Virus record (IMG/VR): IMGVR_UViG_3300043425_001539
Location: 124,001 to 188,000 of that record
Strand: one strand, 5' to 3'
Length of the DNA: 64,000 nt
Shown here: piece by piece, positions 19,049 to 49,112 of the stretch
How the letters are laid out: each line of letters opens with the position of its first letter
Numbering within the stretch: position 1 is the first letter of the stretch
Notes under the pieces: generated by a model
Databases searched by the model: none
The model's input: the letters and a program-made list of their open reading frames with translations, nothing else
Told to the model about the DNA's origin: nothing
Translations under genes and position numbers: made by a program

Positions 19049-19573
19049 TTAGGGTTTAATCCAATACCACATATCATTAACAGATTGAATTGGATTCATA
19101 TTTAAAGAAGCTGCAAATTCAGTTATTGCTTGTTGAACTTCTGAAATTGCTTGATAGTCATGAAACGAAAAAACTCCACCTGATTTAAGTTTAGGATAAT
19201 AATTTTGACAATCCAACAAAACTTGCTCGTATGTATGTAAACCATCAATAAAAATAAAGTCGATTGAATTATCTATAAAATTATCCACTGCGTTATCAGA
19301 AAAATCTTTGTATAATACAAATCTTTCGCCGAAAGTAGCAAGCCTTTCACTCATTTTTTCAAAACAAAAATCCCTTTGACTTTGAAAAAGCTCATAATCA
19401 TTCCAATCCTTATATCCTACGTAAGGATCGACGCCATACAAAGTTAATAATGAACGATTTGATAAAAGGGCATGCGCTGTATCTCCAAGATCAACTCCTA
19501 TTTCTATTCCCTGGATTTGTTTGTTTGTAGGTAATAGATTTAATAACCCATACCCAGCAACTTGTTGTTCCAT
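19049..19573 (-). CDS. Class I SAM-dependent methyltransferase (Methyltransf_24-like)
   Basis: GIEIGVDLG, GVDPY, DFIFIDGLHTYE and LKSGGVFSFHDY motifs. Confidence 0.85.
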   Translation of the reverse strand: MEQQVAGYGLLNLLPTNKQIQGIEIGVDLGDTAHALLSNRSLLTLYGVDPYVGYKDWNDYELFQSQRDFCFEKMSERLATFGERFVLYKDFSDNAVDNFIDNSIDFIFIDGLHTYEQVLLDCQNYYPKLKSGGVFSFHDYQAISEVQQAITEFAASLNMNPIQSVNDMWYWIKP

Positions 19574-19591
19574 AATATATTTTATTACTAT

Positions 19592-19798
19592 TTATCTTTG
19601 GATGATTTCTTTATCCCAATCAGAAGTATCATAATTAAATCCAATAACTACAAATTTGTCCTTGCCAGCTTTCCATTGTGTTTCTTTTAAAGAAGGCTTA
19701 TTTGTGTAAGCGTATGCGGTACCAATTTTATCAACCGCAGCAAAATTATAATTTTTTGGAATATCTTGTTTGGATAATTTTTTATTTTTCATTATCAT
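19592..19798 (-). CDS. Small hypothetical protein; single copy of the domain duplicated in 54840..55511
   Basis: KKLSKQDIP..YNFAAVD..G.AYAY...P...W...IG..YDTSDW. Confidence 0.6.
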   Translation of the reverse strand: MIMKNKKLSKQDIPKNYNFAAVDKIGTAYAYTNKPSLKETQWKAGKDKFVVIGFNYDTSDWDKEIIQR

Positions 19799-19985
19799 TA
19801 ATATTTTTTGTTGCTTTTTTCATCTCTTTGTGCATATCATATACATAGATACAAAAAAACAAGGTACTTAAAATAAAAATAGAATAGCCTCTGAATGTAT
19901 CTAATGTTAAACCATAAGCGGCTGAAATAGCAAGAAAAGTAGCCACAATAAATTTAATTACTTGACTAAAATAAAATTCTTTCAT
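19782..19985 (-). CDS. Small membrane protein
   Basis: Two predicted transmembrane segments. Confidence 0.5.
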   Translation of the reverse strand: MKEFYFSQVIKFIVATFLAISAAYGLTLDTFRGYSIFILSTLFFCIYVYDMHKEMKKATKNINDNEK

Positions 19986-20682
19986 ATTTAAAATATTTAA
20001 TTACAAAATCTGATATCGGCGGAAAAAGTTGTTTATTAACCTTTTTTGTGACTGCGTTATTAAGAATAACATTCATTCGTGTGCGGTTAAAATCTTCAAG
20101 AATTGAAGCGTCATCAATTGTTCTGACTAACTTATTATCATAATAAAATTTAACATAATCTTTTTGCCAATCAACTCGATATTTAATAAAATTTTTAGTT
20201 GGATCTTTAAACCCAAAATTATGAGTTTCTCCGCCGCAATCCATTTTTATTCCGTTTTTCTTATAATGCAAATTTGTTTCAACTTTCCAAATATTTCTTG
20301 GCTTAAGTAAATTTATGTTAAAATAATTTGGACACCAATCACTATAACCTTCAAAAACATCAATTTCAGGCGGCCAATCATCCCAGCTCCACATCCAAAA
20401 AGCAGGCCATAAATTTTTTCCATAAGGCAGCTTGGCCTCAACTTCATAACTACCATGAAAAAAGTCTCGATACGTACATGATACTAAACCTATTCCAACC
20501 GTAGATACAACATCTAAGTGTGGAAAATATCTAGGACTGTATGTTGTTTTTAAATGAAGATATCCATTGCCGTCAATCTCAACACAATGTGGATCATACC
20601 ACTGTTCAGATTTTTCGGGATGAATATCACCCCATCTTTCTTGTTTAATCCATTCGTATCCACACCAATTAATAGTTTCCAT
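19966..20682 (-). CDS. Glycoside hydrolase family 16
   Basis: LWPAFWM...WPPEIDVFEG catalytic ExDxxE motif. Confidence 0.85.
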   Translation of the reverse strand: METINWCGYEWIKQERWGDIHPEKSEQWYDPHCVEIDGNGYLHLKTTYSPRYFPHLDVVSTVGIGLVSCTYRDFFHGSYEVEAKLPYGKNLWPAFWMWSWDDWPPEIDVFEGYSDWCPNYFNINLLKPRNIWKVETNLHYKKNGIKMDCGGETHNFGFKDPTKNFIKYRVDWQKDYVKFYYDNKLVRTIDDASILEDFNRTRMNVILNNAVTKKVNKQLFPPISDFVIKYFKYERILF

Positions 20683-20980
20683 TTTTTAATCTTTTTTTTA
20701 TAGGATGCATATCCAATTTATCAACATCTTTTGATAAATTAATAAACATTTTTATAGCTTTTGCAAAATACATACCTTTTCTGTTAAAATGTGAATAACT
20801 AAGATTATTAATATGTAAATCTTTAGGTCCCCACAAGATCCAGTAATTAGTTTTGCGGCTGTCTTTTACTTTAGTATTTTTTTCTTCTTTATCATTTTTT
20901 ATCAGAACTAATTGATTATTTTTTCCAATAAAGTGATTAATAATAAAACAATTTCCTAATTTGGTATGATTTATTAACAT
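20669..20980 (-). CDS. Hypothetical protein
   Basis: 103-aa ORF in operon. Confidence 0.5.
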   Translation of the reverse strand: MLINHTKLGNCFIINHFIGKNNQLVLIKNDKEEKNTKVKDSRKTNYWILWGPKDLHINNLSYSHFNRKGMYFAKAIKMFINLSKDVDKLDMHPIKKRLKNGNY

Positions 20981-20984
20981 AATT

Positions 20985-21170
20985 TTAATTTAAAGAACGT
21001 GTCATAATTTTTTGAATATTTTCTGCGTTTTGATTTTTAAGTAATTTAATGTGATTTATTAAAATACTTATTTCCTCATCTTTTTTAAGAATCAAATCGC
21101 TTTGTGATTTGATTATCTTTTCAAAAGAATCAATGATATCTTTTGCTTCTTTGACAGAGTTAATATCCAT
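20985..21170 (-). CDS. Small coiled-coil hypothetical protein
   Basis: 61-aa ORF following the promoter motif. Confidence 0.5.
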   Translation of the reverse strand: MDINSVKEAKDIIDSFEKIIKSQSDLILKKDEEISILINHIKLLKNQNAENIQKIMTRSLN

Positions 21171-21201: not shown

Positions 21202-21234
21202 AAAAGTTCAAAGGAAATTATCCTTTGAACTTTT
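21202..21234 (-). terminator. Intrinsic terminator
   Basis: aaaagttcaaagga...tcctttgaactttt inverted repeat. Confidence 0.75.
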
Positions 21235-21249
21235 AAGTTATTAACATTT

Positions 21250-21939
21250 TTATCGATATAAAGCAACCGGGTATTCTTCTAATTCCCAAGGAACCTTATT
21301 TAAGAAAAAGTTTCTGATTAAAATCATATGCGGGCAATATCTTTCATGCGCATGAATCCTTGTGTTTTCTTTTCCGTATTTAAAATCATTTAATAAAAAA
21401 TCAATAAATTCTTGTTCAAACGGAGTAGAATGTAATTTTTCAAATTCTTCATATAGAAAAAAATGTTTTGCATACTTATAAGGCATCACAGCAAACACAT
21501 CAGATATTAATCCCCACGATTCAGCAACTGAAGTTTTTACAGAATTTAATGATTGATTAATAGTAAAATTTGTTAAAAAAGCAAGATCATACCTTGAAAA
21601 AATTATATTGTCATAAGTATCTTTTGGCACTAAATTATATGCTTCTTTTCTGCCATAGTGCATTGATGCATTTTGCCACAATTTATCACTATTAGGTCCT
21701 TTTAAGAATTTCTTTTTAATTCTTGCTTCTATGTTTAAAAATTCTGAATTATCATTTAGATTTTTGCATTTTATTTGTTTAGGCTTTAATGTATCAACAA
21801 TCTTTTGATATTCTTTTTCATTATTACTCCATAAATGACAATAAACATCAAGATTATTTGCATTAATAAAATTGACTATTGTATCTGCGGTTTTTTCAAA
21901 TGTTCTAAATTCGCCCGCCAAAATTAAACAGTTTTTCAT
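21250..21939 (-). CDS. Putative glycosyltransferase-like protein
   Basis: CLILAGEFRT, DVYCHLW, YDNIIFSRYD and ISDVFA; paralogous to the adjacent gene. Confidence 0.55.
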   Translation of the reverse strand: MKNCLILAGEFRTFEKTADTIVNFINANNLDVYCHLWSNNEKEYQKIVDTLKPKQIKCKNLNDNSEFLNIEARIKKKFLKGPNSDKLWQNASMHYGRKEAYNLVPKDTYDNIIFSRYDLAFLTNFTINQSLNSVKTSVAESWGLISDVFAVMPYKYAKHFFLYEEFEKLHSTPFEQEFIDFLLNDFKYGKENTRIHAHERYCPHMILIRNFFLNKVPWELEEYPVALYR

Positions 21940-22697
21940 TGCTCTAATTGTATCATTTGATGAAATTCATCATTTACCCAAACCCCTTGGATTCTTAACG
22001 GATTTTCTTTTCTGACTAAACCTACATTAATGAACCGATTTCTCATTAAATTGTTTATGACGCCTTCTTTGGTTAATTGAGCTTTAAGCATAGGTTCTCC
22101 GTTCATATCTACTCCTTGGTGGTAAAAGTTTGATAAGTTATCATAAGTACCAGCAATTTTATAAAAATTTTCTTGTGAAGAGATTGAAAAATTATCATTA
22201 AACCACCCCATCACAGGACAATTATCAGGAACCCAAATGCGATCGCCAACCAATTCTTTAAGTGGTCTTAATCCTTTCACGGCTGAATCGGTTCTCATTT
22301 TAAAAACCAAATCATAAGATTTTCCGCTCTGTTTTAAAAGCTCGCCTACTTGTGCTTGCGAATAATACATCCTATGAACTATTTCAGGCGAAGTAGGAGC
22401 GGGTGTTCTTGAAAAAACTTTTGAATCATTAACAAATGTTCTTTCTTCTTCAACCAGCAACGCAGCTGGTTCATAGATATCTTCAATCTTTTCCTTAATG
22501 TTTTCTATATCAATTACAGCTGAAGATTCTTCAATCGAAGTCCACGGAGACCGCATGTAATTTTTTGCATCTTTAGGTTTCCAAAGGTGCATATAAACAT
22601 CAACTTCACCTTCCGCTTTAATATCCCGTAAAAATTCCAGGATTTCAGCGTTGTTATAAAAACGGGGTTGCCCGTAAAAACATAATGCTATTTTCAT
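21936..22697 (-). CDS. Putative glycosyltransferase-like protein
   Basis: MKIALCFYGQPR, DVYMHLW, YDLVFKMRTD, FNDNF and GEPML motifs. Confidence 0.6.
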   Translation of the reverse strand: MKIALCFYGQPRFYNNAEILEFLRDIKAEGEVDVYMHLWKPKDAKNYMRSPWTSIEESSAVIDIENIKEKIEDIYEPAALLVEEERTFVNDSKVFSRTPAPTSPEIVHRMYYSQAQVGELLKQSGKSYDLVFKMRTDSAVKGLRPLKELVGDRIWVPDNCPVMGWFNDNFSISSQENFYKIAGTYDNLSNFYHQGVDMNGEPMLKAQLTKEGVINNLMRNRFINVGLVRKENPLRIQGVWVNDEFHQMIQLEQ

Positions 22698-23581
22698 ACA
22701 AATTTGTTTGTTAAAAGTTCTTTCCAAGGTTGATATCTATCATATTGATGAACTATTGCGTACGGTTCACCCAACGCATTGCATACTTGTCCATCCTTCA
22801 TTTGAGGCAATCCACACAACATAACATCAGTAAATTTTTTATGCGCTCTAAATCTTTCATACGAATCGTATTCACTTCTTTTTTTGGTTGACCATTCAGG
22901 AGTGTTCATAGGAATTGCATACAAAGTTCCTAAATTTGCACACCACGTAGAATCTCCTCCACATATTTTGGTTTTTTCATCAAAAATTCGGCGAATTGCT
23001 AAATTATAATAGCACTGATCAACAAAAGCACCAGGGTCTTTGCCAAAATATGCAAGTTCAGCTATTGCGGTAAATACTTTAATTATCATGTCTTTTTTGC
23101 CAGCAATAATACCTGAACATAAAGTTTCATAATTTTTCATAAGATCAAAAAAGGTGTTTCCAAAATGACGTTGTAACATATCACCATTCCAATCTTCATG
23201 TTTATACTTTACTCCTTCGCCTGTTGCTATAATACTATATTCTTCAATGTTATCTTTTACCCATTTTCCTGGGTCAGATTGAAACACAACATCTCTTATG
23301 TCTGTGGTGATAACAACATCATAATTTTTCCCGTATTCACCTTCTAATATACCAGCAAAATCCAAAAATCTTTGAGTTGCAATGTTTAAATCTCCATTTA
23401 CAGTTCCTAGAATAACTCCGATATTTTGACTTTTAAGATATTCAGGTACTGTTTCGTCAATAGGATCATATACTACAACCAATACATCTCCATCAAATTC
23501 TACTTTTTTAAGACTATTTACCCAAGGTTTTAAATCATCAACTGTATAACCTCCAGCTGCTGCAATTAAACAAGTTTTCAT
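22694..23581 (-). CDS. GT-A fold glycosyltransferase-like protein
   Basis: TTDIRDVVFQSDP, CSGIIAG, DQCYYN and IVHQYDR motifs. Confidence 0.65.
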   Translation of the reverse strand: MKTCLIAAAGGYTVDDLKPWVNSLKKVEFDGDVLVVVYDPIDETVPEYLKSQNIGVILGTVNGDLNIATQRFLDFAGILEGEYGKNYDVVITTDIRDVVFQSDPGKWVKDNIEEYSIIATGEGVKYKHEDWNGDMLQRHFGNTFFDLMKNYETLCSGIIAGKKDMIIKVFTAIAELAYFGKDPGAFVDQCYYNLAIRRIFDEKTKICGGDSTWCANLGTLYAIPMNTPEWSTKKRSEYDSYERFRAHKKFTDVMLCGLPQMKDGQVCNALGEPYAIVHQYDRYQPWKELLTNKFV

Positions 23582-24732
23582 ATTTGTGACTTTTTGTGTT
23601 TAAGATAATCAAATAATTCTTTTTCGTTAAAGCGCCCAAGATTTTTTTGCGCAAACCACATATTTTTTCTAATCCGTGCTTTATTTTTTGCATCAAGTTT
23701 TGGATTTTTAAGAAGGTGCATACATGCTGTTTCACATTCTTGAAACCGACCGGTATGAAAAGCTGATACTGAAAATTCATCAAGAGCAAGAAATTCATAT
23801 GCAGCGGTTGCAATGAATAATAAATCTTTTTGAGGATAGGGAGTTTGCGCAGCAATCTTACCAAAATAATATGCATGTTCAAGCATTCGTCTTTTCCTTG
23901 CCTCAATTGCAAGAAGCCAAACAGGTTCAAGACGCCATGGTCTTAAAGACCATGCTTTCATAAGATCAGGTAAAAAATCATGCCAACTATCACCTCGATT
24001 AACTTTACCCCATCCTACCATATATTGTGCGTACCACACTTCCTCGTCCCATCCACCTGCTTCTACGCGTTTTTGATACCATTCAATTGATTTATCCCAT
24101 TGATCCGTATCTCTGTATGATTGAGCAAGATAGAACATATATCGCGCATTCCAAGGCTCATCAGCAATTCCTTGTGTTAATAAACGTATGTCCCGTTCAA
24201 ATTTGTCGTGCTTTGATCCGCCGTCGGATATATCATTAAACCACAAAGAATCCATTTTTTCTCTGGATTTAAAACCTCCTTCACAATCATAATATTCGTG
24301 AGTTACGCCGATACATCGCCATGTTTTTTGTGCATTTAATAATCGAAAGTTGTAATAACTTGTTCCATTATTTTCCTGCATCACATCGTATGCATCAATT
24401 CTTTGATCTAACATGGATTTTTTAAATCCTCTGTTTTCCAATACCATGTCAGCATCAGTAAGAAGAATCCAGTCCCCCCACTTAGTTGCATATGATAAAG
24501 CTTCGTCACGATTATGACCAAAATTAATCCAAGGTCTTTCAATTAATTCACCAGGCTTGTCTTTAAGAAATTTTTTAATTAGATCCTGTGTTCCATCAGT
24601 TGATCCAGTGTCAACTATGCACCATGTGTCAATTATATCATAAACAGATTTTAGACACCTTTCGATAATTTTTGACTCATTTTTGACAATCATATTAAGC
24701 ACGATTGTCTTGCCATTCTTTTTAATGCTCAT
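23578..24732 (-). CDS. GT2 glycosyltransferase with TPR repeats
   Basis: MIVKNES..IERCL, VDTGSTDGT, NFGHNR, TDAD and VTHE motifs; TPR-like FYLAQSY. Confidence 0.85.
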   Translation of the reverse strand: MSIKKNGKTIVLNMIVKNESKIIERCLKSVYDIIDTWCIVDTGSTDGTQDLIKKFLKDKPGELIERPWINFGHNRDEALSYATKWGDWILLTDADMVLENRGFKKSMLDQRIDAYDVMQENNGTSYYNFRLLNAQKTWRCIGVTHEYYDCEGGFKSREKMDSLWFNDISDGGSKHDKFERDIRLLTQGIADEPWNARYMFYLAQSYRDTDQWDKSIEWYQKRVEAGGWDEEVWYAQYMVGWGKVNRGDSWHDFLPDLMKAWSLRPWRLEPVWLLAIEARKRRMLEHAYYFGKIAAQTPYPQKDLLFIATAAYEFLALDEFSVSAFHTGRFQECETACMHLLKNPKLDAKNKARIRKNMWFAQKNLGRFNEKELFDYLKHKKSQI

Positions 24733-24783
24733 TAATTTTTTGTTTTAACAATTTATATATCTTAAATTAATTATTATCAGAAA

Positions 24784-25874: not shown

Positions 25875-25888
25875 AATGATTTAATAAT

Positions 25889-26389: not shown

Positions 26390-26398
26390 AGTATAAAT

Positions 26399-28502: not shown

Positions 28503-28535
28503 ATTGTTTTTATATTCAAAAGATTTTATAAAGTT

Positions 28536-40242: not shown

Positions 40243-40248
40243 TTTAAT

Positions 40249-41430: not shown

Positions 41431-41454
41431 TAATATTTAATTTATTTATTTATC

Positions 41455-42456: not shown

Positions 42457-42461
42457 ATTAA

Positions 42462-43016
42462 TTATTTCTGTTTATGTAAATTAATAAATTCATCAATATT
42501 ATCTGACCACAATTGCATTGCATTAATTTTTATTTTGTTTTCGTCCCAGTCCCACCAAGATATGTTTAATAAATCTTGAATCTGAGATTCGGTAAATCTA
42601 TATTTTACTATTCTTGCTGGATTTCCTGCAACAATTGCATACGGAGGCACATCTTTTGTCACAACAGAACCAGCTGCAACTATTGCTCCGTTGTGAATTG
42701 TTATTCCTGACATTATGGTTGCTTTTGCGCCTATCCAAACATCATTTTCAATTATAATGTCGCCTTTAGCTGAAGGATGTCCCATTTGCATGTGCATATT
42801 GGCAATTTCTTCGGTAACAGGACCCCATAATTGCGAACTTGTGGTAACCCAATCAGGTCTGTGATTTGCATGTAAGAAAAAGTTACAATCTCTGCCTATA
42901 GAATTATACTTACCTGCTATAATTCGATATGAATTGCTCCAAGATATAATATTAATGTTGCGATCAAAATAAGTGCCTCTGTCAGCAGAAAGTAAATGAA
43001 TATTTTCTATGCTCAT
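42462..43016 (-). CDS. CatB/Vat-like hexapeptide O-acetyltransferase
   Basis: KGDIIIENDVWIG...GSVVTKDVPPYAIVAGNPAR...WWDW. Confidence 0.9.
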   Translation of the reverse strand: MSIENIHLLSADRGTYFDRNINIISWSNSYRIIAGKYNSIGRDCNFFLHANHRPDWVTTSSQLWGPVTEEIANMHMQMGHPSAKGDIIIENDVWIGAKATIMSGITIHNGAIVAAGSVVTKDVPPYAIVAGNPARIVKYRFTESQIQDLLNISWWDWDENKIKINAMQLWSDNIDEFINLHKQK

Positions 43017-43065: not shown

Positions 43066-43839
43066 CTATATTAATGCGTACTTGTCTATTGTATTAATTT
43101 TTTCAATTAAAAATTGGCCCAAATATTTCTCAAATTCTTTAAATTCTGATGTGTTTCTAAAAATAACCCATTCATCGGCCCATTCTGTGATTCCCCAATT
43201 TATTTTTCCAATAGGTTCTCGATTCAAAGAAATGTGTATTCCATGAACAGGTCTGTATTCATTTTCATAATCAAAATAAGAAAATCTTTTTTTAACTAAT
43301 TCATATAAAAAAACTTCGTCGTGATTATGTAATCTCTTTTCAATTAAATCGGCGTAAGGAGGTAATGGATAGTAATTATCCCACAAGGAAAAATGAAGCC
43401 CTGTTAATCTGCGATACTGCTGGTTTTCATCAGCAACTTTTCTAACAATATTGCTGTATGGAAGACCTGTTTTTTCCATATCTTTGACGTGAAGAGATAA
43501 CAAATCTTTTTGCAAACAAATTATGTCAATATCGGAAATGTAAATATATTTAGATTTAACCGTTGGTTCAATTATAAATCTTGATAAATTTGGAACACAA
43601 GTTATTTTGTTCTTTTTATGAATAATTACGCCAACTTCAATCTTATTGATTAAAAACCTATTTGGAAATATTTTTGAAATGTAAGATATAGCCTTTTGTG
43701 TCTCTTCACTTAATTCATCATCATAACCTATTTCAATAAATGCAGTTGGATTATGATACAAATGTGAAAAAACAAACAAAGGAATAAAATTATTGTAAGA
43801 CTTATTACAACATGTATAAATATTTAAGGTTTCTTTCAT
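43066..43839 (-). CDS. GT-A-like hypothetical protein
   Basis: YIYISDIDI DXD motif; RLTGLHF and RPVHGIH. Confidence 0.55.
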   Translation of the reverse strand: MKETLNIYTCCNKSYNNFIPLFVFSHLYHNPTAFIEIGYDDELSEETQKAISYISKIFPNRFLINKIEVGVIIHKKNKITCVPNLSRFIIEPTVKSKYIYISDIDIICLQKDLLSLHVKDMEKTGLPYSNIVRKVADENQQYRRLTGLHFSLWDNYYPLPPYADLIEKRLHNHDEVFLYELVKKRFSYFDYENEYRPVHGIHISLNREPIGKINWGITEWADEWVIFRNTSEFKEFEKYLGQFLIEKINTIDKYALI

Positions 43840-44387
43840 TAGATTAAGTGTTCTATAAATTTTTTATTGCCTCCTCTATACCAGTGATATAGATATAAAC
43901 CTCTTATTAAATAAAATTTTAATTGGTGCTTTTGTAATTTCCAATGCAAATCATTATCCACGCCAAGCATACCTTCAGCTTTAAATCCGCCGATTGTTTT
44001 CCAGGTGCTTTTTTTAATTAAAATTAAAAAGCCACTCATAACAGCATTTTTTGGCTTATTTGTTACATCAATAACCGATGAATCATAAATAACTTTCATT
44101 TTTTCACCAAAATCTCTATGATATTTTATGTTATCATTAAAAATATCAACACCAGGCGCAATTTGCCATTCGCATCCTACTCTGTTTGTAAATCCCGTAA
44201 AACAAGAAGCGTCGGGATTTTCCATTAAAGCTTTTTCTATGATTAATCCATAATCAGGTGTTGTGAAAATTGTATCACCGTCAACTATACAAGCCCAATC
44301 ATCATCATTCGGCAAAATTTCCATGAAAGAATTATAATACTGGCCTATATTTTTATTTGCATCAAAAGGGATTGTATAATATATCAT
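43839..44387 (-). CDS. GT2-like glycosyltransferase
   Basis: WACIVDGD, SGFLILIKKSTW..IGGF and GVDND motifs. Confidence 0.7.
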   Translation of the reverse strand: MIYYTIPFDANKNIGQYYNSFMEILPNDDDWACIVDGDTIFTTPDYGLIIEKALMENPDASCFTGFTNRVGCEWQIAPGVDIFNDNIKYHRDFGEKMKVIYDSSVIDVTNKPKNAVMSGFLILIKKSTWKTIGGFKAEGMLGVDNDLHWKLQKHQLKFYLIRGLYLYHWYRGGNKKFIEHLI

Positions 44388-45445
44388 ATTGGTTTTCCGT
44401 TTATAAAGTTTTGCAACTGTCCGTAATCTTTTCTAATTTTTACTTTTTTTGCAATGCTTGAATTGTGTGTCCAAAGCCAAAAGTAATCTGAGCAAATAAT
44501 ATTAGAGTTTAATGGTTTAATATTAATTGGGTACTTCCATAATACATAGTTAAAAGATATCTGATCTCTTTTGGAATATTTTAAAACTTGTTCCCACCAC
44601 ATATTACATAAAAATCGAACTTCTTTAACGTTTTTTCGATAAATAATACCTGTTTGGACCATTCCCCAATTTTCAGGATATCCTTCATTCTTATATATTT
44701 CTGTTTGTTTAATTAAGATTTTTTCATCATCTTTTTTAAATTTAATACAAGCATCTCTTTCCTGGTAAACACAAATTCTGTCAGGGTGCGCAGAAACTGC
44801 AAAAATGTCTTGAGGAGTCAAAAATTTTTGCATAAATTGTTGCGGAGAATTAATAATTTCTACAGTACCATCAATCCATATAGAAGTTTCATATTCAGGT
44901 AAAAATAAATGAGGTAAAATTTTTAACGCTCTTGCTCTTTTTGTTTGATCCAAAAAATTTAAAATTTTAGGTATTTCTCTTATTTCCCATTTTTTATATC
45001 TGCCTGGTCTAATAAGATTGGTAAAACAAATATAATCCCAAGAATCGTCATAATTGCCTATATCTTTAAGATTATCATAATCACCCGAAATACATGTGTA
45101 TATTACTTTTTTATTTTTGGTTTCAATAAATTCATTTGCTTCTATATTTTGATAAAAAAATTCGATTGATTCATTGGCTTTTTCAGGTCTATGTACAGTA
45201 ATTGCTTCTACAGAAAATTCGTCAATTTTATATTGTAGTCCTGTTTTTCTACCTTGCTTAAGCCAATGTCTTAAAGCTAAAAATTCATTATTAATGTTTT
45301 TAGCTTTTAATTGCGAATTAATAAAAATATAATCTTGCCAGTCAAAATCTTCGGGTACATGCGGATGATTTCTTAATCGTTCAAGTTGCTTTGTTGTCGC
45401 GTCTTCGCGTAGCCTCTCAAATTTTTCATTTCTTGGGTCCTTCAC
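44384..45445 (-). CDS. DUF616 (TOD1/MUCI70-like) glycosyltransferase with N-terminal FDW..Y repeat
   Basis: IYTCISGDYD, KILPHLFLP..SIWIDG, HPDRICVYQE and RDQISFNY; GTG start. Confidence 0.75.
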   Translation of the reverse strand: MKDPRNEKFERLREDATTKQLERLRNHPHVPEDFDWQDYIFINSQLKAKNINNEFLALRHWLKQGRKTGLQYKIDEFSVEAITVHRPEKANESIEFFYQNIEANEFIETKNKKVIYTCISGDYDNLKDIGNYDDSWDYICFTNLIRPGRYKKWEIREIPKILNFLDQTKRARALKILPHLFLPEYETSIWIDGTVEIINSPQQFMQKFLTPQDIFAVSAHPDRICVYQERDACIKFKKDDEKILIKQTEIYKNEGYPENWGMVQTGIIYRKNVKEVRFLCNMWWEQVLKYSKRDQISFNYVLWKYPINIKPLNSNIICSDYFWLWTHNSSIAKKVKIRKDYGQLQNFINGKPI

Positions 45446-45473
45446 TTTATGCGTTTTTTATAGCATATATATC

Positions 45474-45505
45474 AAAAAAGGAAAGGTACACTTAAGTACC
45501 TTTCC
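45474..45505 (-). terminator. Intrinsic terminator ending the Ro60 transcript
   Basis: ggaaaggtac-acttaa-gtacctttcc hairpin followed by a U-tract on the minus strand. Confidence 0.8.
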
Positions 45506-45528
45506 TATATTAATTAAAAAAACAACAA

Positions 45529-47154
45529 CTATTTATTTTCAATTTCATCCCACGCTTTTATAATTGCGTCAGCATATTGTGCCTCTTTACCTGTCCATCC
45601 TGTTAAAATTGCTCCGCGATATAATGTTTCAGGCAAAACAGAATTTGTATATCCGCCCACCTGAACAGAAAACACATTTACCTTTGGATTTACAGTTTTA
45701 CGATATTGTCGAATAACAGCAAGAACGTCGAGATATGATGAATAATTTGAAGATCTGTAAGTAAACTCTTTAGGTAATTCATCATGCCCAAACAATTCGC
45801 CTCGGCCAGCCTGCATATCTGAATAAATAAAAACTGTGTCATAATGAATTTTTTCGTTTAGTGCAGCATTCCAAAATAACCAAAGACCATTTTCGGTGTT
45901 AGATCCTGTTCTTTTACCTTTCTCTGTAATGTCTGTAAGTTGACTTAATATTCCGTTTCTTTTGGAAATAGGTGTCATTGTTAATCTGTCGCCAAAAACT
46001 CCAACCTCTCCATTGTCAGCTTGTTTTGCAGTTATAACTGAAGACAAATTAGCAATATCAGCAATAGTAATTTTCCCATATTCCGAATTAAATGTGCCCC
46101 AGGCAGAACCAGAATTGTCTGATAAGCATGCAACCTTGCCTTTTAATTTAGGCATATTTGCAACTGAAATATCAATACACTCTTCAAGAGCATCAAGAAT
46201 TTGCTGCTTATAAGGAATGTCAGTGCTTTTAATAATGTTAAAAGCAGTATAATACCTAAATGGGAATTGCTTTCCTTGTAAAACTCCTGCTTTTAATTGC
46301 TCAAGAATTTGTGTTGCTTGATCTTGTGATAATTCAGATTTTGAAAAAATTCCGCGCAAATTCCTCAACAAGGCCATATGAGGAACTTTAATTGTATTCA
46401 AAATTTCCACCCATGTCTTGCCACTTGATTTTAACATTTCCCAAGTTTGCTCAGTTTCTTTTATCGCAACGGTACCTGTACGCATCAATTCATTGATAGT
46501 TTCATTGTTTGCGTGAGATAACCTTACCAAGTCAATTAGCCTTTTTCCTTTATACTTATTAATTTGATATCTAGACATTGATTCTAAAGAATCAGCCCAA
46601 GACCTCTTAAGAATTGAAGGTAAACCTTTTTTAGACCCGTTTAAATACATATAATATTCAAATTGGTTAGTTATGTCGTCAGGACGCGGTGTAATTTCTT
46701 TAGCAAAAGCGCGCATATAACCTGGATTTTTGGCATTAAATTCCACCCGATTTTTGTGACGAATTGCTCTAACATAAATAACCGCGGGATTCAAGCGCAT
46801 TAAGTATTCATTACGTAATTCCTTGGCAAACTCCAAGGTTCCTAAATAATCATAATCCAATGCGTTGTCAATTACTCGCTCAAACACTTGCCCAGCATCT
46901 TCATTTGGGGATATCAAGTCAGCAAAAATAAAATCCGCAGATAATTTCGAAGGATATTCAACCTTGATACCTTTTCTATAGTACTGCGGTTCGCCAAAAA
47001 TTGAGCTCGTTGCAACCATTTTGAGTGTTTGCAAAGGGTTAACTTTAAATGAAGTACCGCCCATAAAGTTTTGTTCAGCTTGCGCTTCATACATAGAGAT
47101 TTCTGCTTTTCTTTGAACGACTTCCTTGGATGCTGATGAGCTTAATCTTGACAT
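45529..47154 (-). CDS. rsr: Ro60 / TROVE domain RNA-binding protein with vWA domain
   Basis: FGEPQYY, LRNEYLMRLNP, YQINKY, MALLRNLR and KQFPFRYYTA; MIDAS DNSGSA and IYSDMQ. Confidence 0.9.
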   Translation of the reverse strand: MSRLSSSASKEVVQRKAEISMYEAQAEQNFMGGTSFKVNPLQTLKMVATSSIFGEPQYYRKGIKVEYPSKLSADFIFADLISPNEDAGQVFERVIDNALDYDYLGTLEFAKELRNEYLMRLNPAVIYVRAIRHKNRVEFNAKNPGYMRAFAKEITPRPDDITNQFEYYMYLNGSKKGLPSILKRSWADSLESMSRYQINKYKGKRLIDLVRLSHANNETINELMRTGTVAIKETEQTWEMLKSSGKTWVEILNTIKVPHMALLRNLRGIFSKSELSQDQATQILEQLKAGVLQGKQFPFRYYTAFNIIKSTDIPYKQQILDALEECIDISVANMPKLKGKVACLSDNSGSAWGTFNSEYGKITIADIANLSSVITAKQADNGEVGVFGDRLTMTPISKRNGILSQLTDITEKGKRTGSNTENGLWLFWNAALNEKIHYDTVFIYSDMQAGRGELFGHDELPKEFTYRSSNYSSYLDVLAVIRQYRKTVNPKVNVFSVQVGGYTNSVLPETLYRGAILTGWTGKEAQYADAIIKAWDEIENK

Positions 47155-47180
47155 AATAAAAATTGGTTTAATAAGTTAAA

Positions 47181-47262
47181 AAATCGAGAATATCAAAAAG
47201 AGTTTTTAATAAAGTATCATTTACAAATTGATTTTGAAGTAACTCTTTTTCCGCTTCGATTT
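47181..47262 (-). ncRNA. Y RNA-like element 1
   Basis: AAAUCGA-AGCGG-AAAAAGAGUU-ACUUCAA...AACUCUUUUU-GAUAUUC-UCGAUUU. Terminal stem plus inner stem; ends 26 nt upstream of the Ro60 ATG. Confidence 0.7.
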
Positions 47263-47263
47263 G

Positions 47264-47336
47264 AGCAACAAGCGAGACTCGAACTCGCAACATTTAGTTT
47301 GGAAAACTAACACTCTACCAATTGAGCTATTGTTGC
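47264..47336 (-). tRNA. tRNA-Gly(TCC)
   Basis: Cloverleaf: GCAACAA/TTGTTGC acceptor, TTAGT-TTTCCAA-ACTAA anticodon arm, TTCGAGT T-loop; no encoded CCA. Confidence 0.9.
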
Positions 47337-47341
47337 TTATT

Positions 47342-47426
47342 TTTTCTTGAGAAAATTATTAAAGGTGTTGGTGTGTGAAAATTCTAAAACAATTTTGAAG
47401 TAACCTTTAATACCGCTTCAAGAAAA
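47342..47426 (-). ncRNA. Y RNA-like element 2
   Basis: UUUUCUUGA-AGCGG-UAUUAAAGGU-UACUUCAA...ACCUUUAAUA-AUUUUC-UCAAGAAAA. Same architecture as element 1 with compensatory stem changes. Confidence 0.7.
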
Positions 47427-47431
47427 TATTT

Positions 47432-47482
47432 TTTTTAAAGAACGTTTGTAGATATAATATACAAGTAATGATAAATAGTTTT
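47432..47482 (-). promoter_or_regulatory. Promoter and leader duplicated upstream of both RNA transcription units
   Basis: ttttttaaagaacgtttgtagatata...ataaatagtttt is near-identical to 50241-50292 and contains the AAAAC-N15-GTAT motif. Confidence 0.7.
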
Positions 47483-47507
47483 TGTGATTTGATATTTTTT
47501 TTTAAAT

Positions 47508-48254
47508 TTAATCAAACGGCAAAGAAACTCCTCTTTTTCCAACAACGGCACAAGATAAAAAGTTTGCAAAACTTATTGAAGCGTTCAAATCCTTTGTTTC
47601 TAAATAAGTAATACCAAAAGCCGCAACAAAAGTATCTCCTGCACCACTTACATCAATGGTTTCTTTTGGATTTTTAAGAGCGAATGTTTTGTTGTTTATC
47701 ATCGCTCCTCTTGCGCCCAGTGTAACAATAATATTACTTTTATCAGAAATATGCAAATTGTTTGACATTTCGCTTTCGTTTAACTTAATAAATGTAAATT
47801 CTTTAACAATTTCATCAGTTAAAATTTTCTTGGAATCCAACAAAGTTAATTTGCCATTTTTTGCTATTTTTAATAAATCATCATGCCCTAAAAAACCTTT
47901 GTTATAATCACTTACAATTACTAAATCCGCTTCTTTAATCTCTTTTATATTTTCTTCTGTGATGTTAATTTTTCCAACTGGTTGCAATTCTCCGTCATCA
48001 ATTCTAACAATCATTTGGTTTGACTTTTCATCAACAATCCTTGTTTTTTTAATCAATTCTTTCTGATGCCAAAATGTTATACTTGTCTCGGGATTTATTG
48101 ATTTAATGTTTTCTACAACATTTCCTGCCATTCCAGGGTTTTGTGTAGTTTTAATTGGATTAAAAACTGGAACAGGCGCTTCAGGACACAGCCTAACAGT
48201 TTTTCCATAAATAAATTCATCAGTACAAAGTTCACCTATAACTATTACTTTCAT
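47508..48254 (-). CDS. rfaE1: Heptose-7-phosphate kinase-like PfkB protein (HldE/RfaE domain I)
   Basis: RLCPEAPVPV, GMAGNV, IVSDYNKG, VTLGARGA and DVSGAGDTF motifs. Confidence 0.85.
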   Translation of the reverse strand: MKVIVIGELCTDEFIYGKTVRLCPEAPVPVFNPIKTTQNPGMAGNVVENIKSINPETSITFWHQKELIKKTRIVDEKSNQMIVRIDDGELQPVGKINITEENIKEIKEADLVIVSDYNKGFLGHDDLLKIAKNGKLTLLDSKKILTDEIVKEFTFIKLNESEMSNNLHISDKSNIIVTLGARGAMINNKTFALKNPKETIDVSGAGDTFVAAFGITYLETKDLNASISFANFLSCAVVGKRGVSLPFD

Positions 48255-48720
48255 AATTTAAAATTTTTGTTGTTGAATATTTTTCAATTCTTGGAAAAAA
48301 AATTAGTTCTTTAGCATATTCACTTCCTATAACTCCATTTTTGCGATACTCTTCTCCTACTATTAAATAATCAGGGTTTAATCTTTTAATTGCATTTTTA
48401 AGTTCTTCTGAGTCATCAAAAACAATAATGTTTGATACATAAACTATCGAGCTTAACATCTCAATTCTATCTTTTAAAGAATTATACGGTCGCAATTCGC
48501 CTTTTAACTCTTTAATTCTACGATCTGTGTCAATTCCTACTGTTACTTCCCCGTATGAATAAGCATATTTAAGTAAACGAATATGACCGTTGTGTAACAC
48601 ATCAAAAGTACCGTTAACCCAAACCTTTTTATTTAATTTACTATAATGATTTGGCGCAGGAAGACTGGAATAAAAATCCCAGTCTTCATCATCAAGAAAT
48701 TTAGTGGTTTCTTTATTCAT
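48232..48720 (-). CDS. rfaE2: Heptose-1-phosphate adenylyltransferase-like protein (RfaE domain II / cytidylyltransferase)
   Basis: VNGTFDVLHNGH, VGIDTD..LKGELRP and YSTTKI; start reassigned to MNKETT. Confidence 0.85.
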   Translation of the reverse strand: MNKETTKFLDDEDWDFYSSLPAPNHYSKLNKKVWVNGTFDVLHNGHIRLLKYAYSYGEVTVGIDTDRRIKELKGELRPYNSLKDRIEMLSSIVYVSNIIVFDDSEELKNAIKRLNPDYLIVGEEYRKNGVIGSEYAKELIFFPRIEKYSTTKILNYESNSYR

Positions 48721-48725
48721 GTGTA

Positions 48726-49112
48726 CTACTTTTGCGAATCGCCAGCCCAAACTCGGTAACTGTCTTCATCAAAGTGTTGTGTTGATACTTCAAAAACAAT
48801 GCCATCTGTAAGAGCTTCAAGTTGATGCGGTTGTCCTGGATATTGTCGAACAGAGTCTCCTTCTCTTAATGTTATTTCATTGACTTTTGCGGTTTGCGTA
48901 TCTATCCAACGATAAATAAATTCGCCTTCTTTAACATACCAAGTTTCATCTTTAAGCATGTGATAATGCATTGAAAATTTTGCGCCTGCTTTAAAACACA
49001 AAAGTTTTCCGCAATAAAATTCATTATTTTCAAATACAATCTCATGTCCCCATCCTTTAGGAACATTGCATTCTTTGCACTCCTTTGCATTGAATATGTT
49101 TGGTTTTTTCAT
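48726..49112 (-). CDS. Cupin (mannose-6-phosphate isomerase-like)
   Basis: KGWGHE, FSMHYHMLKDETWYV, PH.L and EVST..F.EDSYR motifs. Confidence 0.8.
   Translation of the reverse strand: MKKPNIFNAKECKECNVPKGWGHEIVFENNEFYCGKLLCFKAGAKFSMHYHMLKDETWYVKEGEFIYRWIDTQTAKVNEITLREGDSVRQYPGQPHQLEALTDGIVFEVSTQHFDEDSYRVWAGDSQK

What the first reader, a model, noticed from the sequence alone, without database searches (positions are those of the whole stretch)
19049..49112. ~30 kb glycan factory including a protein O-heptosylation pathway
Seen: more than 10 glycosyltransferase-like genes, three methyltransferase domains, an aminotransferase with a GNAT, an O-acetyltransferase, GH16, a cupin, an Aah/TibC-like heptosyltransferase with the Cys iron-finger, and split HldE kinase and adenylyltransferase. 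Known: HldE activities make ADP-heptose, the donor for Aah/TibC. Inference: the phage glycosylates its own virion proteins or remodels the host surface; several of these units start at late motifs (24754, 45466). GmhA and GmhB were not seen in this window.
Basis: partly seen in the sequence, partly recalled or inferred. Interest (0 to 1): 0.6.

Follow-up and report, generated by a model that had tools for sequence, protein, structure and literature searches.

The report
Phage sugar-gene island with heptosyltransferase
A large T4-like phage carries a 30-kb block of soluble sugar-making and sugar-attaching enzymes, including a cut-down relative of the TibC/Aah protein heptosyltransferases and its own route to the donor ADP-heptose; relatives of this enzyme are in hundreds of uncultured phages, and what they glycosylate is unknown.

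Summary
The listed genes are real and at the stated coordinates. ORF 24784-25620(-) passes the NCBIfam Aah/TibC equivalog cut-off (204 vs 200 bits). It keeps the catalytic Asp and the four iron-finger Cys. It lacks the N-terminal beta-barrel, Arg-286 and the hydrophobic thumb tip. ORFs 47508-49112 are a cupin, an HldE-C-like adenylyltransferase and an HldE-N-like kinase.

The block is composite:
- 27086-34113 is probably a 5-hydroxymethylcytosine DNA-modification module (T4 gp42-like enzyme, kinase, C5-methylase-like gene, glycosyltransferases), syntenic in four related phages.
- 45529-47482 holds a Ro60/TROVE gene, a structured RNA and tRNA-Gly.

New points:
- The genome is T4-like and carries a second, 1118-aa GT4-GT-A-BAHT fusion.
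- At least 585 IMG/VR contigs encode BAHT domains, often beside an FkbM methyltransferase.
- Cupin-adenylyltransferase-kinase is a recurrent phage operon, sometimes preceded by the HAD phosphatase found here at 35721. This suggests non-orthologous replacement of GmhA and GmhB.

None of the 35 proteins has a clear membrane segment. The acceptor (virion protein, host surface or DNA) is unresolved. Novelty: a new variant of a known kind; moderately interesting.

The parts
48726..49112 (-). Metal-binding cupin, 128 aa. Candidate manno-type sugar-phosphate aldose-ketose isomerase standing in for GmhA.
   Evidence: Cupin_2 1.3e-9, with weak Lyx_isomer and MannoseP_isomer hits. H49, H51, E56 and H96 are invariant in 31 homologues. 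AlphaFold model has pLDDT 89.6; the top PDB matches are D-lyxose/D-mannose isomerase 7nzo/7nzp. 429 IMG/VR relatives; the order cupin-adenylyltransferase-kinase holds in 31-38 of 79 loci.
48232..48750 (-). HldE C-domain-like heptose-1-phosphate adenylyltransferase. The likely ATG is at 48720.
   Evidence: CTP_transf_like 8.1e-19. rfaE_dom_II 9.7e-25, 87 bits, below the cut-off of 181.5. HxGH and STT motifs are visible in the translation.
47508..48254 (-). HldE N-domain-like (PfkB) heptose-7-phosphate kinase, 248 aa, shorter than the 315-position model.
   Evidence: PfkB 3.7e-15. rfaE_dom_I 1.1e-36, 126.6 bits, below the cut-off of 345. The only PDB hit is the D-beta-D-heptose 7-phosphate kinase 4e84. 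GAGD motif present.
45529..47482 (-). Not glycan genes: TROVE/Ro60-like protein (45529-47154), tRNA-Gly(UCC) at 47263-47336, and a structured RNA element at 47337-47482 that recurs at 50115-50292.
   Evidence: TROVE 1.6e-8. tRNA. Direct repeats D1, D2 and D8. Folds have z-scores of -3.4 and -2.1; the closing stem is the same in both copies while the inner stems differ in sequence.
45466..45506 (-). Strong terminator hairpin (45479-45506) followed by the GATATATA motif (45466-45473), 21 nt before the start of the TOD1-like gene.
44384..45445 (-). TOD1/MUCI70-type glycosyltransferase-like protein.
   Evidence: PF04765 5e-23.
43066..44387 (-). Glycosyltransferase (43839-44387, phrog_14179) and an unannotated 257-aa ORF (43066-43839).
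39757..43016 (-). Amino-sugar tailoring set: hexapeptide acyltransferase (42462-43016), a 38811-like protein (41455-42456), a DegT/PseC-like aminotransferase (40249-41430) and a GNAT (39757-40242).
   Evidence: (PseC 2.2e-60, below cut-off).
38811..39764 (-). GT-A-fold domain plus a C-terminal beta-sandwich. This family is fused to, or lies next to, BAHT domains in other phages and in this genome's own 1118-aa protein.
   Evidence: Model pLDDT 71.7; Foldseek matches GT-A enzymes at E 1e-5 with low TM 0.31-0.41. Homologues and fusions.
36357..38811 (-). Two FkbM-type methyltransferase domains: 36357-37334, and the C-terminal part of 37324-38811, whose N-terminal 300 aa are unannotated.
   Evidence: PF05050 2.1e-18 and 2.4e-7. 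An FkbM homologue lies within 6 kb of the BAHT in 33 of 80 phage loci, often 60-75 nt downstream or fused.
35721..36143 (-). Small HAD phosphatase (DxDGT). Candidate heptose-1,7-bisphosphate 7-phosphatase standing in for GmhB. Here it overlaps the start of the next gene by 4 nt.
   Evidence: TIGR01689 EcbF/BcbF 7.7e-22, below cut-off. A homologue lies directly upstream of the cupin in L018, L020, L074 and L076. It is homologous to the cyanophage genes mis-labelled 'phosphoheptose isomerase'.
34117..35724 (-). Fusion of a sugar-1-phosphate nucleotidyltransferase and an APH-type kinase: a second activation route of unknown product.
   Evidence: NTP_transferase 1.8e-15, APH 1.4e-3. RmlA/GalU-like; weak HddC and MurU hits.
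27086..34113 (-). Probable DNA (5-hydroxymethylcytosine) modification module:
- dCMP hydroxymethylase-like, 27086-27943
- dNMP-kinase-like, 27936-28502
- GT32-like, 28536-29300
- C5 DNA-methylase-like, 29302-30516
- GT25, 30524-31279
- GT-B, 31307-32701
- GT-B-like, 32704-34113
   Evidence: The best PDB hit of 27086 is T4 dCMP hydroxymethylase, E 3.2e-18, with Asp at the position of T4 Asp179. A canonical ThyA lies elsewhere in the genome. The block is syntenic in L101-L104 at 36-60% identity. 32704 has protein-language-model look-alikes that include a T4 beta-glucosyltransferase cluster.
25620..27078 (-). Four small ORFs of unknown function (144, 82, 166 and 84 aa). The last is Cys-rich (CxxC...CxxxxCxxC) and its stop overlaps the BAHT start (TAATG).
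   Evidence: Homologues of 26644, 26399 and 25620 travel with the DNA-modification block in L101-L104.
24784..25620 (-). Short (278 aa) TibC/Aah-family heptosyltransferase: catalytic domain plus iron finger, no beta-barrel.
   Evidence: TIGR04414 204.3 bits against a cut-off of 200, covering profile positions 84-373 of 374. TibC 4rap E 4.6e-34 over TibC residues 98-379. Residue mapping.
23578..24761 (-). GATATATA motif (24754-24761) and a GT2 glycosyltransferase with a TPR domain (23578-24732).
21202..23581 (-). Three unannotated ORFs followed by a 14-bp-stem terminator at 21202-21234. 22694-23581 has no family. 21936-22727 and 21250-21939 both match phrog_13607, and the former resembles an S-SM2 'capsular polysaccharide biosynthesis protein'.
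19049..20682 (-). GH16 glycoside hydrolase (19966-20682) and a Methyltransf_24/TylF-like methyltransferase (19049-19573), beyond the terminator.
50543..53442 (-). Outside the finding: four tandem DUF285/BspA-like paralogues made of perfect 24-aa solenoid repeats with three conserved Ser per turn. A speculative acceptor lead only.
   Evidence: DUF285 3.8e-49. Strongest internal repeats in the genome. The family is common in large myoviruses.

Best explanation
The region is a composite island of soluble enzymes in a T4-like phage of at least 238 kb. It has three parts.

1. Donor supply.
- A fused nucleotidyltransferase-kinase gives a second activated donor of unknown identity.
- An aminotransferase, a GNAT and a hexapeptide acyltransferase tailor amino sugars.

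2. Transfer and decoration.
- A barrel-less TibC/Aah-family heptosyltransferase puts heptose on Ser of a cytoplasmic protein acceptor.
- Neighbouring GT-A and GT-B enzymes extend the glycan and FkbM methyltransferases decorate it.
- The acceptor is most probably a phage structural protein made late. This step is inferred, not shown.

3. An embedded module at 27086-34113 makes 5-hydroxymethyl-dCMP and probably glycosylates the phage DNA.

Shown here: the family memberships, the synteny and the motifs. Inferred: the substrates of the cupin and the HAD, the acceptor, and the timing.
For: Family and residue evidence:
- BAHT membership at the curated cut-off, with the catalytic Asp, T226, K230, W305 and all four iron-finger Cys retained.
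- A second, fuller BAHT domain (TibC residues 38-380, E 2.7e-67) in an 1118-aa GT4-GT-A-BAHT protein of the same genome.
- HldE is the best family for both the kinase and the adenylyltransferase; the kinase's only PDB hit is a heptose-7-phosphate kinase.

Comparative evidence:
- The cupin-adenylyltransferase-kinase operon recurs in 31-38 of 79 viral loci. It is preceded by the HAD in 4 loci and by a BAHT fusion in L091.
- The same four gene types sit together in cyanophage S-CAM1.
- The cupin keeps its metal ligands, and its nearest solved folds are D-lyxose/D-mannose isomerases.
- No canonical GmhA or GmhB in the genome.
- BAHT domains are found in at least 585 viral contigs, mostly fused to other glycosyltransferases and paired with FkbM.

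Context in this window:
- None of the 35 proteins has a clear membrane segment; one window of one protein is borderline.
- A TPR-bearing GT2 lies next to the BAHT.
- The GATATATA motif is shared with giant ORFs and with the operon containing the gp23 homologue.
- DNA module.
Against: - The short BAHT lacks the beta-barrel, whose deletion abolishes TibC activity. It has Ser for the sugar-binding Arg-286, and Gly/Asn for the thumb-tip Phe-265/Val-266 needed for the dodecamer. It may therefore bind another donor or acceptor, or be inactive on its own.
- The kinase and adenylyltransferase score well below the equivalog cut-offs.
- The cupin also occurs without the kinase nearby (about 25 of 79 loci), and near a GDP-fucose synthase in 19 loci. 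It could be a mannose-6-phosphate isomerase or an epimerase. Generic cupins score almost as well in Foldseek.
- Here the HAD is coupled to the nucleotidyltransferase-kinase gene, not to the heptose trio.
- The heptose trio lies near a BAHT in only 1 of 80 BAHT loci.
- No acceptor was identified.
- LPS-core glycosyltransferases are also soluble, so the lack of membrane proteins does not exclude host LPS as the target.
Confidence: 0.5

Rival explanations
1. Host-surface remodelling. The enzymes act as auxiliary metabolic genes on the host's LPS core, lipooligosaccharide or outer-membrane proteins during infection. This would change the cell surface, for example to exclude other phages. It is the usual reading of cyanophage 'LPS' islands.
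For: - GT25 (an LPS/LOS family), GT9-related and GT4-type enzymes are typical of core assembly, and such enzymes are soluble.
- Cyanomyoviruses carry homologous heptose genes in islands annotated as LPS or capsule genes.
- Viromics papers file viral heptosyltransferases under LPS biosynthesis (PMC8066274).
- The pathway steps missing from the phage (a dehydratase for the aminotransferase, an epimerase) must come from the host.
Against: - The heptosyltransferase matches the protein-modifying BAHT equivalog (204 bits) and LPS heptosyltransferase I only at E 0.007.
- There is no lipid-carrier transferase, flippase, ligase or exporter.
- The late-type promoter motif is shared with large, presumably structural genes.
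- Surface remodelling late in a lytic cycle has little obvious benefit (inference).
Confidence: 0.22
2. Most of the glycosyltransferases and donor pathways serve DNA hypermodification. Hydroxymethylcytosine in phage DNA would be decorated with one or more unusual sugars, and the 'glycan factory' is mainly an anti-restriction system.
For: - A gp42-like dCMP hydroxymethylase with the cytosine-specifying Asp, a kinase, a C5-methylase-like gene and glycosyltransferases form a block conserved in four related phages.
- 32704-34113 has look-alikes in a T4 beta-glucosyltransferase cluster.
- T-even phages are known to glycosylate hydroxymethylcytosine (own knowledge).
Against: - The conserved block covers only about 27-34 kb. 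The BAHT, FkbM genes, heptose trio and amino-sugar genes are absent from it in L101-L104.
- The BAHT family is known only as a protein Ser transferase (PMC4358343).
- The similarity to T4 beta-glucosyltransferase is a protein-language-model lead without sequence support.
- No dCTPase of the MazG type was found.
Confidence: 0.13
3. The short BAHT is a decayed or non-catalytic remnant. It could also be a subunit that works only with another protein, such as the 84-aa Cys-rich product of the overlapping upstream gene or the 1118-aa BAHT. On this reading the heptose genes feed only the 1118-aa enzyme.
For: - Loss of the beta-barrel, Arg-286 and the thumb tip.
- In TibC, deletion of the first 80 or 95 residues abolishes activity (PMC4358343).
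- The gene is absent from the syntenic block of relatives.
Against: - The same short stand-alone form (274-307 aa, 41-51% identical) recurs in about 10 of the 80 best viral loci and in a related 202-kb phage. This indicates selection on the form.
- The catalytic Asp, three of the four sugar-binding residues and the iron finger are kept.
- Arg-286 is also replaced in five of seven phage homologues, including long ones.
Confidence: 0.15

Closest known systems
TibC / Aah bacterial autotransporter heptosyltransferases (BAHT family; PDB 4rap; PMC4358343)
   Same: GT-B-like catalytic domain, about 35% identical over TibC residues 98-379. Shares the catalytic Asp-110, T226, K230, W305 and the Cys-339/342/358/370 iron finger, and passes NCBIfam TIGR04414 at the cut-off.
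   Different: - Phage-encoded.
- No N-terminal beta-barrel (TibC 1-97).
- Arg-286 replaced by Ser; Pro-300 replaced by Ser (as in Aah, which accepts both D,D- and L,D-heptose); thumb tip Phe/Val replaced by Gly/Asn.
- No autotransporter or AIDA repeats in the genome.
- Most phage relatives are C-terminal domains of 600-1600-aa multi-glycosyltransferase proteins.
ADP-L-glycero-beta-D-manno-heptose pathway of E. coli (GmhA, HldE, GmhB, HldD), and the split HldA/HldC of Burkholderia and Neisseria (own knowledge; PDB 4e84)
   Same: Separate PfkB kinase and cytidylyltransferase-fold adenylyltransferase whose best families are the two HldE domains.
   Different: - No SIS isomerase, no HAD-IIIA GmhB and no SDR epimerase.
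- A metal cupin and an EcbF/BcbF-type mini-HAD travel with the two enzymes instead.
- The product would be the D,D isomer unless the host epimerises it.
Heptose/'LPS' gene islands of cyanomyoviruses (S-CAM1, S-SM2, P-SSM2, P-TIM68)
   Same: Homologous cupin (41-48% identity), kinase, nucleotidyltransferase and HAD genes lie side by side, in T4-like genomes, among glycosyltransferases.
   Different: - The cyanophage records call the HAD 'phosphoheptose isomerase' and the cupin 'nucleotidyltransferase' or 'cysteine dioxygenase'.
- S-CAM1 carries a gene annotated as HldD epimerase next to its heptose genes.
- Among cultured phages a BAHT was found only in Microcystis phage Mel-JY01. The three other GenBank records with one are uncultured phages of 636-735 kb.
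T4 gp42/gp1/alpha- and beta-glucosyltransferase system for hydroxymethylcytosine DNA
   Same: dCMP-hydroxymethylase-like enzyme with the cytosine-specifying Asp, an adjacent nucleotide kinase, a canonical ThyA elsewhere in the genome, and glycosyltransferases next door.
   Different: - The glycosyltransferases here are GT32-, GT25- and divergent GT-B-type.
- A C5 DNA-methylase-like gene (two copies in relatives) is part of the block.
- No MazG-type dCTPase was found.
Autonomous virion glycosylation in giant eukaryotic viruses (review PMC4691112, title and abstract only) and in mycobacteriophages (own knowledge)
   Same: A virus-encoded set of soluble glycosyltransferases, sugar-nucleotide enzymes and methyltransferases, with no membrane-bound glycan-assembly or export component.
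   Different: Those systems use other glycosyltransferase families. Heptose and BAHT-type enzymes have not, to my knowledge or in the searched library, been reported for virions.

Membership tests
BAHT (Aah/TibC autotransporter O-heptosyltransferase, TIGR04414) | Score at or above the curated equivalog cut-off | tested here: met
   204.3 bits against a cut-off of 200, E 2.8e-60, covering profile positions 84-373 of 374. The margin is narrow.
BAHT (Aah/TibC autotransporter O-heptosyltransferase, TIGR04414) | Catalytic base Asp-110 | tested here: met
   The 'LGD' motif aligns with TibC 108-110. The position is invariant in 8 phage homologues.
BAHT (Aah/TibC autotransporter O-heptosyltransferase, TIGR04414) | Four iron-finger cysteines (TibC 339, 342, 358, 370) | tested here: met
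   C237, C240, C257 and C269 of the 288-aa frame align with them. Iron binding itself was not tested.
BAHT (Aah/TibC autotransporter O-heptosyltransferase, TIGR04414) | [quoted passage not shown] | tested here: inconclusive
   T226, K230 and W305 are kept. Arg-286 aligns with Ser. Only 2 of 7 phage homologues keep the Arg.
BAHT (Aah/TibC autotransporter O-heptosyltransferase, TIGR04414) | N-terminal beta-barrel (TibC residues 1-97), required for TibC activity | tested here: not met
   The protein starts at the equivalent of TibC residue 98, and the upstream ORF's stop overlaps its ATG. The genome's 1118-aa BAHT does cover TibC 38-380.
BAHT (Aah/TibC autotransporter O-heptosyltransferase, TIGR04414) | Beta-hairpin thumb with a hydrophobic tip (Phe-265/Val-266) for dodecamer assembly | tested here: not met
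   The aligned residues are Gly and Asn. The oligomeric state was not tested.
BAHT (Aah/TibC autotransporter O-heptosyltransferase, TIGR04414) | Partner autotransporter with AIDA-type beta-helix repeats as acceptor | tested here: not met
   No PF16168 match in the genome at E up to 0.1. No conserved structural neighbour in 80 viral loci.
ADP-heptose biosynthesis pathway | Heptose-7-phosphate kinase (HldE N domain / HldA) | tested here: inconclusive
   It is the best family, at 126.6 bits against a cut-off of 345. The protein is truncated relative to the model. The only PDB hit is 4e84.
ADP-heptose biosynthesis pathway | Heptose-1-phosphate adenylyltransferase (HldE C domain / HldC) | tested here: inconclusive
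   It is the best family, at 87.1 bits against a cut-off of 181.5. Glycerol-3-phosphate cytidylyltransferase is next, at 58.5 bits.
ADP-heptose biosynthesis pathway | SIS-fold sedoheptulose-7-phosphate isomerase GmhA | tested here: not met
   No SIS_2 match in the 238-kb record. The cupin is proposed as an analogue on synteny and fold only.
ADP-heptose biosynthesis pathway | HAD-IIIA phosphatase GmhB | tested here: not met
   No TIGR01656 match. An EcbF/BcbF-type HAD is present and is syntenic with the cupin in other phages.
ADP-heptose biosynthesis pathway | SDR epimerase HldD | tested here: not met
   No PF01370 match in the genome.
dCMP hydroxymethylase (T4 gp42 type) | Thymidylate-synthase fold, closest to gp42, with Asp in place of the uracil-specifying Asn | tested here: met
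   1b5e E 3.2e-18 against about 1e-9 to 1e-12 for thymidylate synthases. 'LTFD' aligns with T4 'FRND'. The role of Asp179 is from own knowledge. A separate ThyA scores 302 bits.
T4-like myoviruses | gp23-type capsid protein, gp20-type portal, T4-type large terminase | tested here: met
   PF07068 9.5e-35, PF07230 4.2e-69, PF03237 7.1e-20.

The most novel reading that the evidence does not exclude
T4-like environmental phages carry a self-sufficient protein O-heptosylation system. It has a non-orthologous ADP-heptose pathway, in which a metal cupin replaces GmhA and a mini-HAD replaces GmhB. This feeds a phage-specific radiation of iron-finger BAHT enzymes (at least 585 contigs), which, together with fused glycosyltransferases and FkbM methyltransferases, coat virion proteins with methylated heptose glycans. 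The bacterial 'autotransporter' heptosyltransferases would then be a small offshoot of a mainly viral family.
Probability: 0.25. Interest if true: 0.8.

Novelty: new variant of a known kind. Interest (0 to 1): 0.6.

Why it matters
BAHT enzymes are known as virulence-associated modifiers of adhesins in a few Gram-negative pathogens. Finding them in hundreds of uncultured phages suggests that phage protein glycosylation is far more common than the few studied cases imply. In these phages they are usually fused to other glycosyltransferases and paired with methyltransferases.

Such glycosylation could affect virion stability, host recognition and immune or defence evasion.

The cupin and mini-HAD give a directly testable case of non-orthologous replacement in a well-studied pathway. 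They also correct a recurrent mis-annotation in cyanophage genomes ('phosphoheptose isomerase' for a HAD phosphatase).

Splitting off the hydroxymethylcytosine module prevents over-counting 'glycan' genes in this and related phages.

Tried and rejected
Searches and tests that gave nothing usable:
- Near-identity DNA search against GenBank phages: no match.
- PHROGs on flanking and unannotated genes: almost nothing.
- Pfam at a relaxed E-value on nine unannotated ORFs: nothing usable.
- Pfam on the giant ORFs (1906, 2490 and 2154 aa): no families.
- Sequence search of PDB with 31307 and 32704: no hits, so the T4 beta-glucosyltransferase likeness stays a protein-language-model lead.
- Complex prediction of the short BAHT with the DUF285 repeat protein 51096-51872: no answer, which is neither support nor evidence against.
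No environment, host or expression data were obtained, and read laying was not used.
- One strand folding failed on a length limit and was resent shorter.

Ideas considered and dropped or weakened:
- I checked whether the SDR gene near the cupin in 19 loci is HldD. It is a GDP-fucose synthase. This weakens an exclusive cupin-heptose link rather than supporting it.
- The search for the kinase elsewhere in five cupin-bearing contigs found it in one of five fragmentary records, which is not decisive.
- Cupin relatives in 185,579 prokaryote genomes: only four, all on MAG contigs that are probably phage. This gives no bacterial context to test the GmhA-analogue idea.
- The weak TcdA/TcdB Pfam hit of the GT32-like gene (22 residues around the DXD motif, below cut-off) is the shared nucleotide-sugar motif and nothing more.

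Full report
**What the window is.** The window is bases 124001-188000 of a single 238,475-bp IMG/VR virus record (linear, CheckV 84% complete).
- The genome encodes a gp23-type capsid protein, a gp20-type portal and a T4-type terminase, so it is a large T4-like myovirus.
- GC content is about 30%, and all genes of the finding lie on the minus strand.
- A 136-kb contig from another sample carries the same region at about 100% identity (L002).
- No GenBank phage is close at the DNA level.

**Check of the observation.**
- Seven genes have profile-level glycosyltransferase support: GT2+TPR at 23578-24732, TibC-like at 24784-25650, GT32-type at 28536-29300, GT25 at 30524-31279, GT-B at 31307-32701, a PHROG glycosyltransferase at 43839-44387 and a TOD1/MUCI70-like gene at 44384-45445.
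- Three more have weaker support. 38811-39764 folds with a GT-A-like N-domain and a beta-sandwich (pLDDT 72; Foldseek E 1e-5 to GT-A enzymes). 41455-42456 is a weak paralogue of it (E 0.002), and its Atlas model resembles the middle domains of viral 'Aah/TibC family' proteins. 32704-34113 is a distant paralogue of the GT-B next to it (E 2e-5).
- Several ORFs stay unannotated: 21250, 21936, 22694, 43066, the N-terminal half of 37324, and four small ORFs at 25620-27078.

**The heptosyltransferase.** ORF 24784-25650 scores 204.3 bits on TIGR04414 against a cut-off of 200. It aligns with TibC residues 98-379 (E 4.6e-34).
- The real start is almost certainly the ATG at 25620, which overlaps the stop of the upstream 84-aa Cys-rich ORF (TAATG). 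That gives 278 aa.
- I mapped the residues defined in the TibC structure paper (PMC4358343). Kept: catalytic Asp-110, Thr-226, Lys-230, Trp-305 and the four iron-finger Cys.
- Changed: Arg-286 is Ser. Pro-300 is Ser, as in Aah, which tolerates both heptose epimers. The thumb tip Phe-265/Val-266 is Gly/Asn. The beta-barrel (1-97), whose deletion kills TibC, is absent.
- The genome holds a second BAHT domain outside the window (genome 199163-202519, 1118 aa). It is organised as GT4, then a 38811-like GT-A, then a BAHT covering TibC 38-380 with Arg-286 and a hydrophobic thumb tip.

**How widespread the BAHT domain is.**
- Only 4 of 50,697 GenBank phage records carry a relative: three uncultured phages of 636-735 kb and Microcystis phage Mel-JY01.
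- In the best 80 loci, about 85% of the domains are the C-terminus of 600-1600-aa proteins with GT4 or GT-A domains. About ten are short stand-alone genes of 274-307 aa like this one.
- A related 202-kb phage also has the short form.
- An FkbM methyltransferase homologue lies within 6 kb in 33 of 80 loci. It is often 60-75 nt downstream, and in L130 and L133 it is fused.
- Other neighbours include further GT9 enzymes, a GT4-FkbM fusion, sulfotransferases and T4 gp59.
- The searched literature has no paper on phage TibC-like enzymes. Viromics papers file viral heptosyltransferases under LPS biosynthesis.

**The donor pathway.**
- 47508-48254 and 48232-48750 hit the two HldE domains best, but below the equivalog cut-offs. 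The kinase's only PDB hit is a heptose-7-phosphate kinase.
- The cupin upstream of them is remarkably conserved: 429 viral relatives, the best 80 at 64-87% identity, with His-His-Glu-His invariant.
- In 31-38 of 79 loci the order is cupin-adenylyltransferase-kinase with overlapping or abutting genes. In four loci a homologue of the window's HAD (35721-36143) comes directly before the cupin. In L091 a BAHT fusion does.
- In cyanomyoviruses S-CAM1 and S-SM2 the same four gene types are adjacent. The genes annotated there as 'phosphoheptose isomerase' are in fact homologues of this HAD, with its DxDGT motif.
- The cupin model (pLDDT 89.6) is closest to D-lyxose/D-mannose isomerases and to the CapF cupin, although generic cupins follow closely.
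- The genome has no SIS GmhA, no HAD-IIIA GmhB and no SDR epimerase.
- Inference: four enzymes for four steps, with the cupin as a manno-type aldose-ketose isomerase and the HAD as the 7-phosphatase.
- Counter-evidence: about 25 loci have the cupin without the kinase nearby. 19 loci have a GDP-fucose synthase close by, so a mannose-6-phosphate isomerase role is possible. In this window the HAD is translationally coupled to the nucleotidyltransferase-kinase fusion at 34117-35724, whose product is unknown.

**A DNA-modification module inside the block.**
- 27086-27943 matches T4 dCMP hydroxymethylase best (E 3.2e-18) and has Asp where thymidylate synthases have the uracil-specifying Asn. A canonical ThyA lies elsewhere in the genome.
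- Four related contigs (50-60% identity) share this syntenic order: 32704-like, two C5-methylase-like genes, the GT32-like gene, the kinase, the hydroxymethylase, then 26644-like and 26399-like. They have no BAHT there.
- 32704-34113 has protein-language-model look-alikes in a T4 beta-glucosyltransferase cluster, without sequence support in PDB.
- I therefore read 27086-34113 as a hydroxymethylcytosine synthesis and probable glycosylation module, at moderate confidence.

**Organisation of the region.**
- Strong minus-strand terminators at 45479-45506 and 21202-21234 bracket a 24-kb run of 31 tightly packed genes.
- The octamer GATATATA sits 21-22 nt before the starts at 45445 and 24732. Genome-wide it occurs 32 times on the coding strand and twice on the other. 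It precedes several giant ORFs and the operon that contains the gp23 homologue. It resembles the T4 late promoter TATAAATA (own knowledge), so 'late' is a reasonable inference, not a result.
- None of the 35 proteins has a convincing membrane segment. There is no lipid-carrier transferase, flippase or exporter among the annotated families.

**The acceptor.** It was not identified.
- The genome has no AIDA repeats.
- The strongest internal repeats in the genome belong to four tandem DUF285/BspA-like paralogues at 50543-53442. They are perfect 24-aa solenoid turns with three conserved Ser, 1.4-4.3 kb upstream of the heptose trio. Such genes are common in large myoviruses.
- They do not co-occur with BAHT or cupin genes within 6 kb in other phages. 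A complex prediction gave no answer. They are a lead only.

**Verdict.**
The enzyme-donor pairing is sound and gains comparative support. The block, however, is a mosaic, the heptosyltransferase is a truncated variant, and the target is unknown.
- My best estimate puts a soluble, probably phage, protein acceptor ahead of host-surface remodelling and of a DNA-only role.
- The novelty lies in three things: the phage radiation of BAHT domains, their pairing with FkbM methyltransferases, and the candidate cupin and mini-HAD replacements in ADP-heptose synthesis.

Noticed in passing
window 45529-47482 and 50115-50292: A TROVE/Ro60-like gene lies next to a roughly 100-nt element: a promoter-like stretch plus a hairpin containing GAAGCGGTA...GGTTACTTCAA. 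The element occurs twice, 2.8 kb apart, each copy followed by a tRNA or tRNA-like stretch. Both copies fold with the same closing stem and with inner stems of different sequence (z-scores -3.4 and -2.1). These are candidate phage Y-like RNAs. Rfam gave only a weak sub-threshold YrlA hit elsewhere (22 bits).
   Followed up: partly
window 49141-50010: An array of six tRNA genes (Trp, Gln, Lys, Thr, Pro, Met), plus tRNA-Gly at 47263-47336, separates the heptose trio from the DUF285 genes.
   Followed up: partly
whole genome; in the window at 1924, 9074, 24754, 45466, 53880, 54537, 59733, 60652, 63171 (minus strand): The octamer GATATATA occurs 32 times on the coding strand and twice on the other. 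Most copies lie 5-56 nt upstream of start codons, including those of giant ORFs and of the operon with the gp23 homologue. It is probably this phage's late-type promoter element.
   Followed up: partly
window 50543-53442: Four tandem DUF285/BspA-like paralogues share a 45-aa N-terminus and consist of perfect 24-residue repeats with three conserved Ser per repeat. Homologous multi-copy families occur in Aeromonas, Campylobacter and Synechococcus large myoviruses.
   Followed up: partly
genome 199163-202519 (L011:11163-14519, minus strand): An 1118-aa protein outside the window combines a GT4 domain, a 38811-like GT-A domain and a nearly full-length TibC-like domain with the iron finger, about 10 kb from the gp23 homologue.
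   Followed up: yes
L092 (S-SM2 SSM2_207, SSM2_210) and L093 (S-CAM1 N330309_113): The cyanophage genes annotated 'phosphoheptose isomerase' are 103-109-aa HAD phosphatases (DxDGT), homologous to window 35721-36143. They are not SIS isomerases. The adjacent cupin is variously labelled 'nucleotidyltransferase' or 'cysteine dioxygenase'.
   Followed up: yes
window 29302-30516; L101-L104: A C5 cytosine-methylase-like gene with the Pro-Cys motif sits inside a block that also makes hydroxymethyl-dCMP. Relatives carry two tandem copies. It is unclear what it methylates if the cytosines are already substituted at C5.
   Followed up: no
window 17780-18367 and 19966-20682: An SLT lytic transglycosylase and a GH16 hydrolase with an intact ExDxxE motif and no signal peptide flank the low end of the block. 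They may serve in lysis or as a polysaccharide depolymerase.
   Followed up: no
genome 187328-189199 and 189221-191092: Two adjacent ORFs of exactly 623 aa each. The first is the gp23 homologue. The second has a 14-residue internal periodicity and carries the promoter motif.
   Followed up: no
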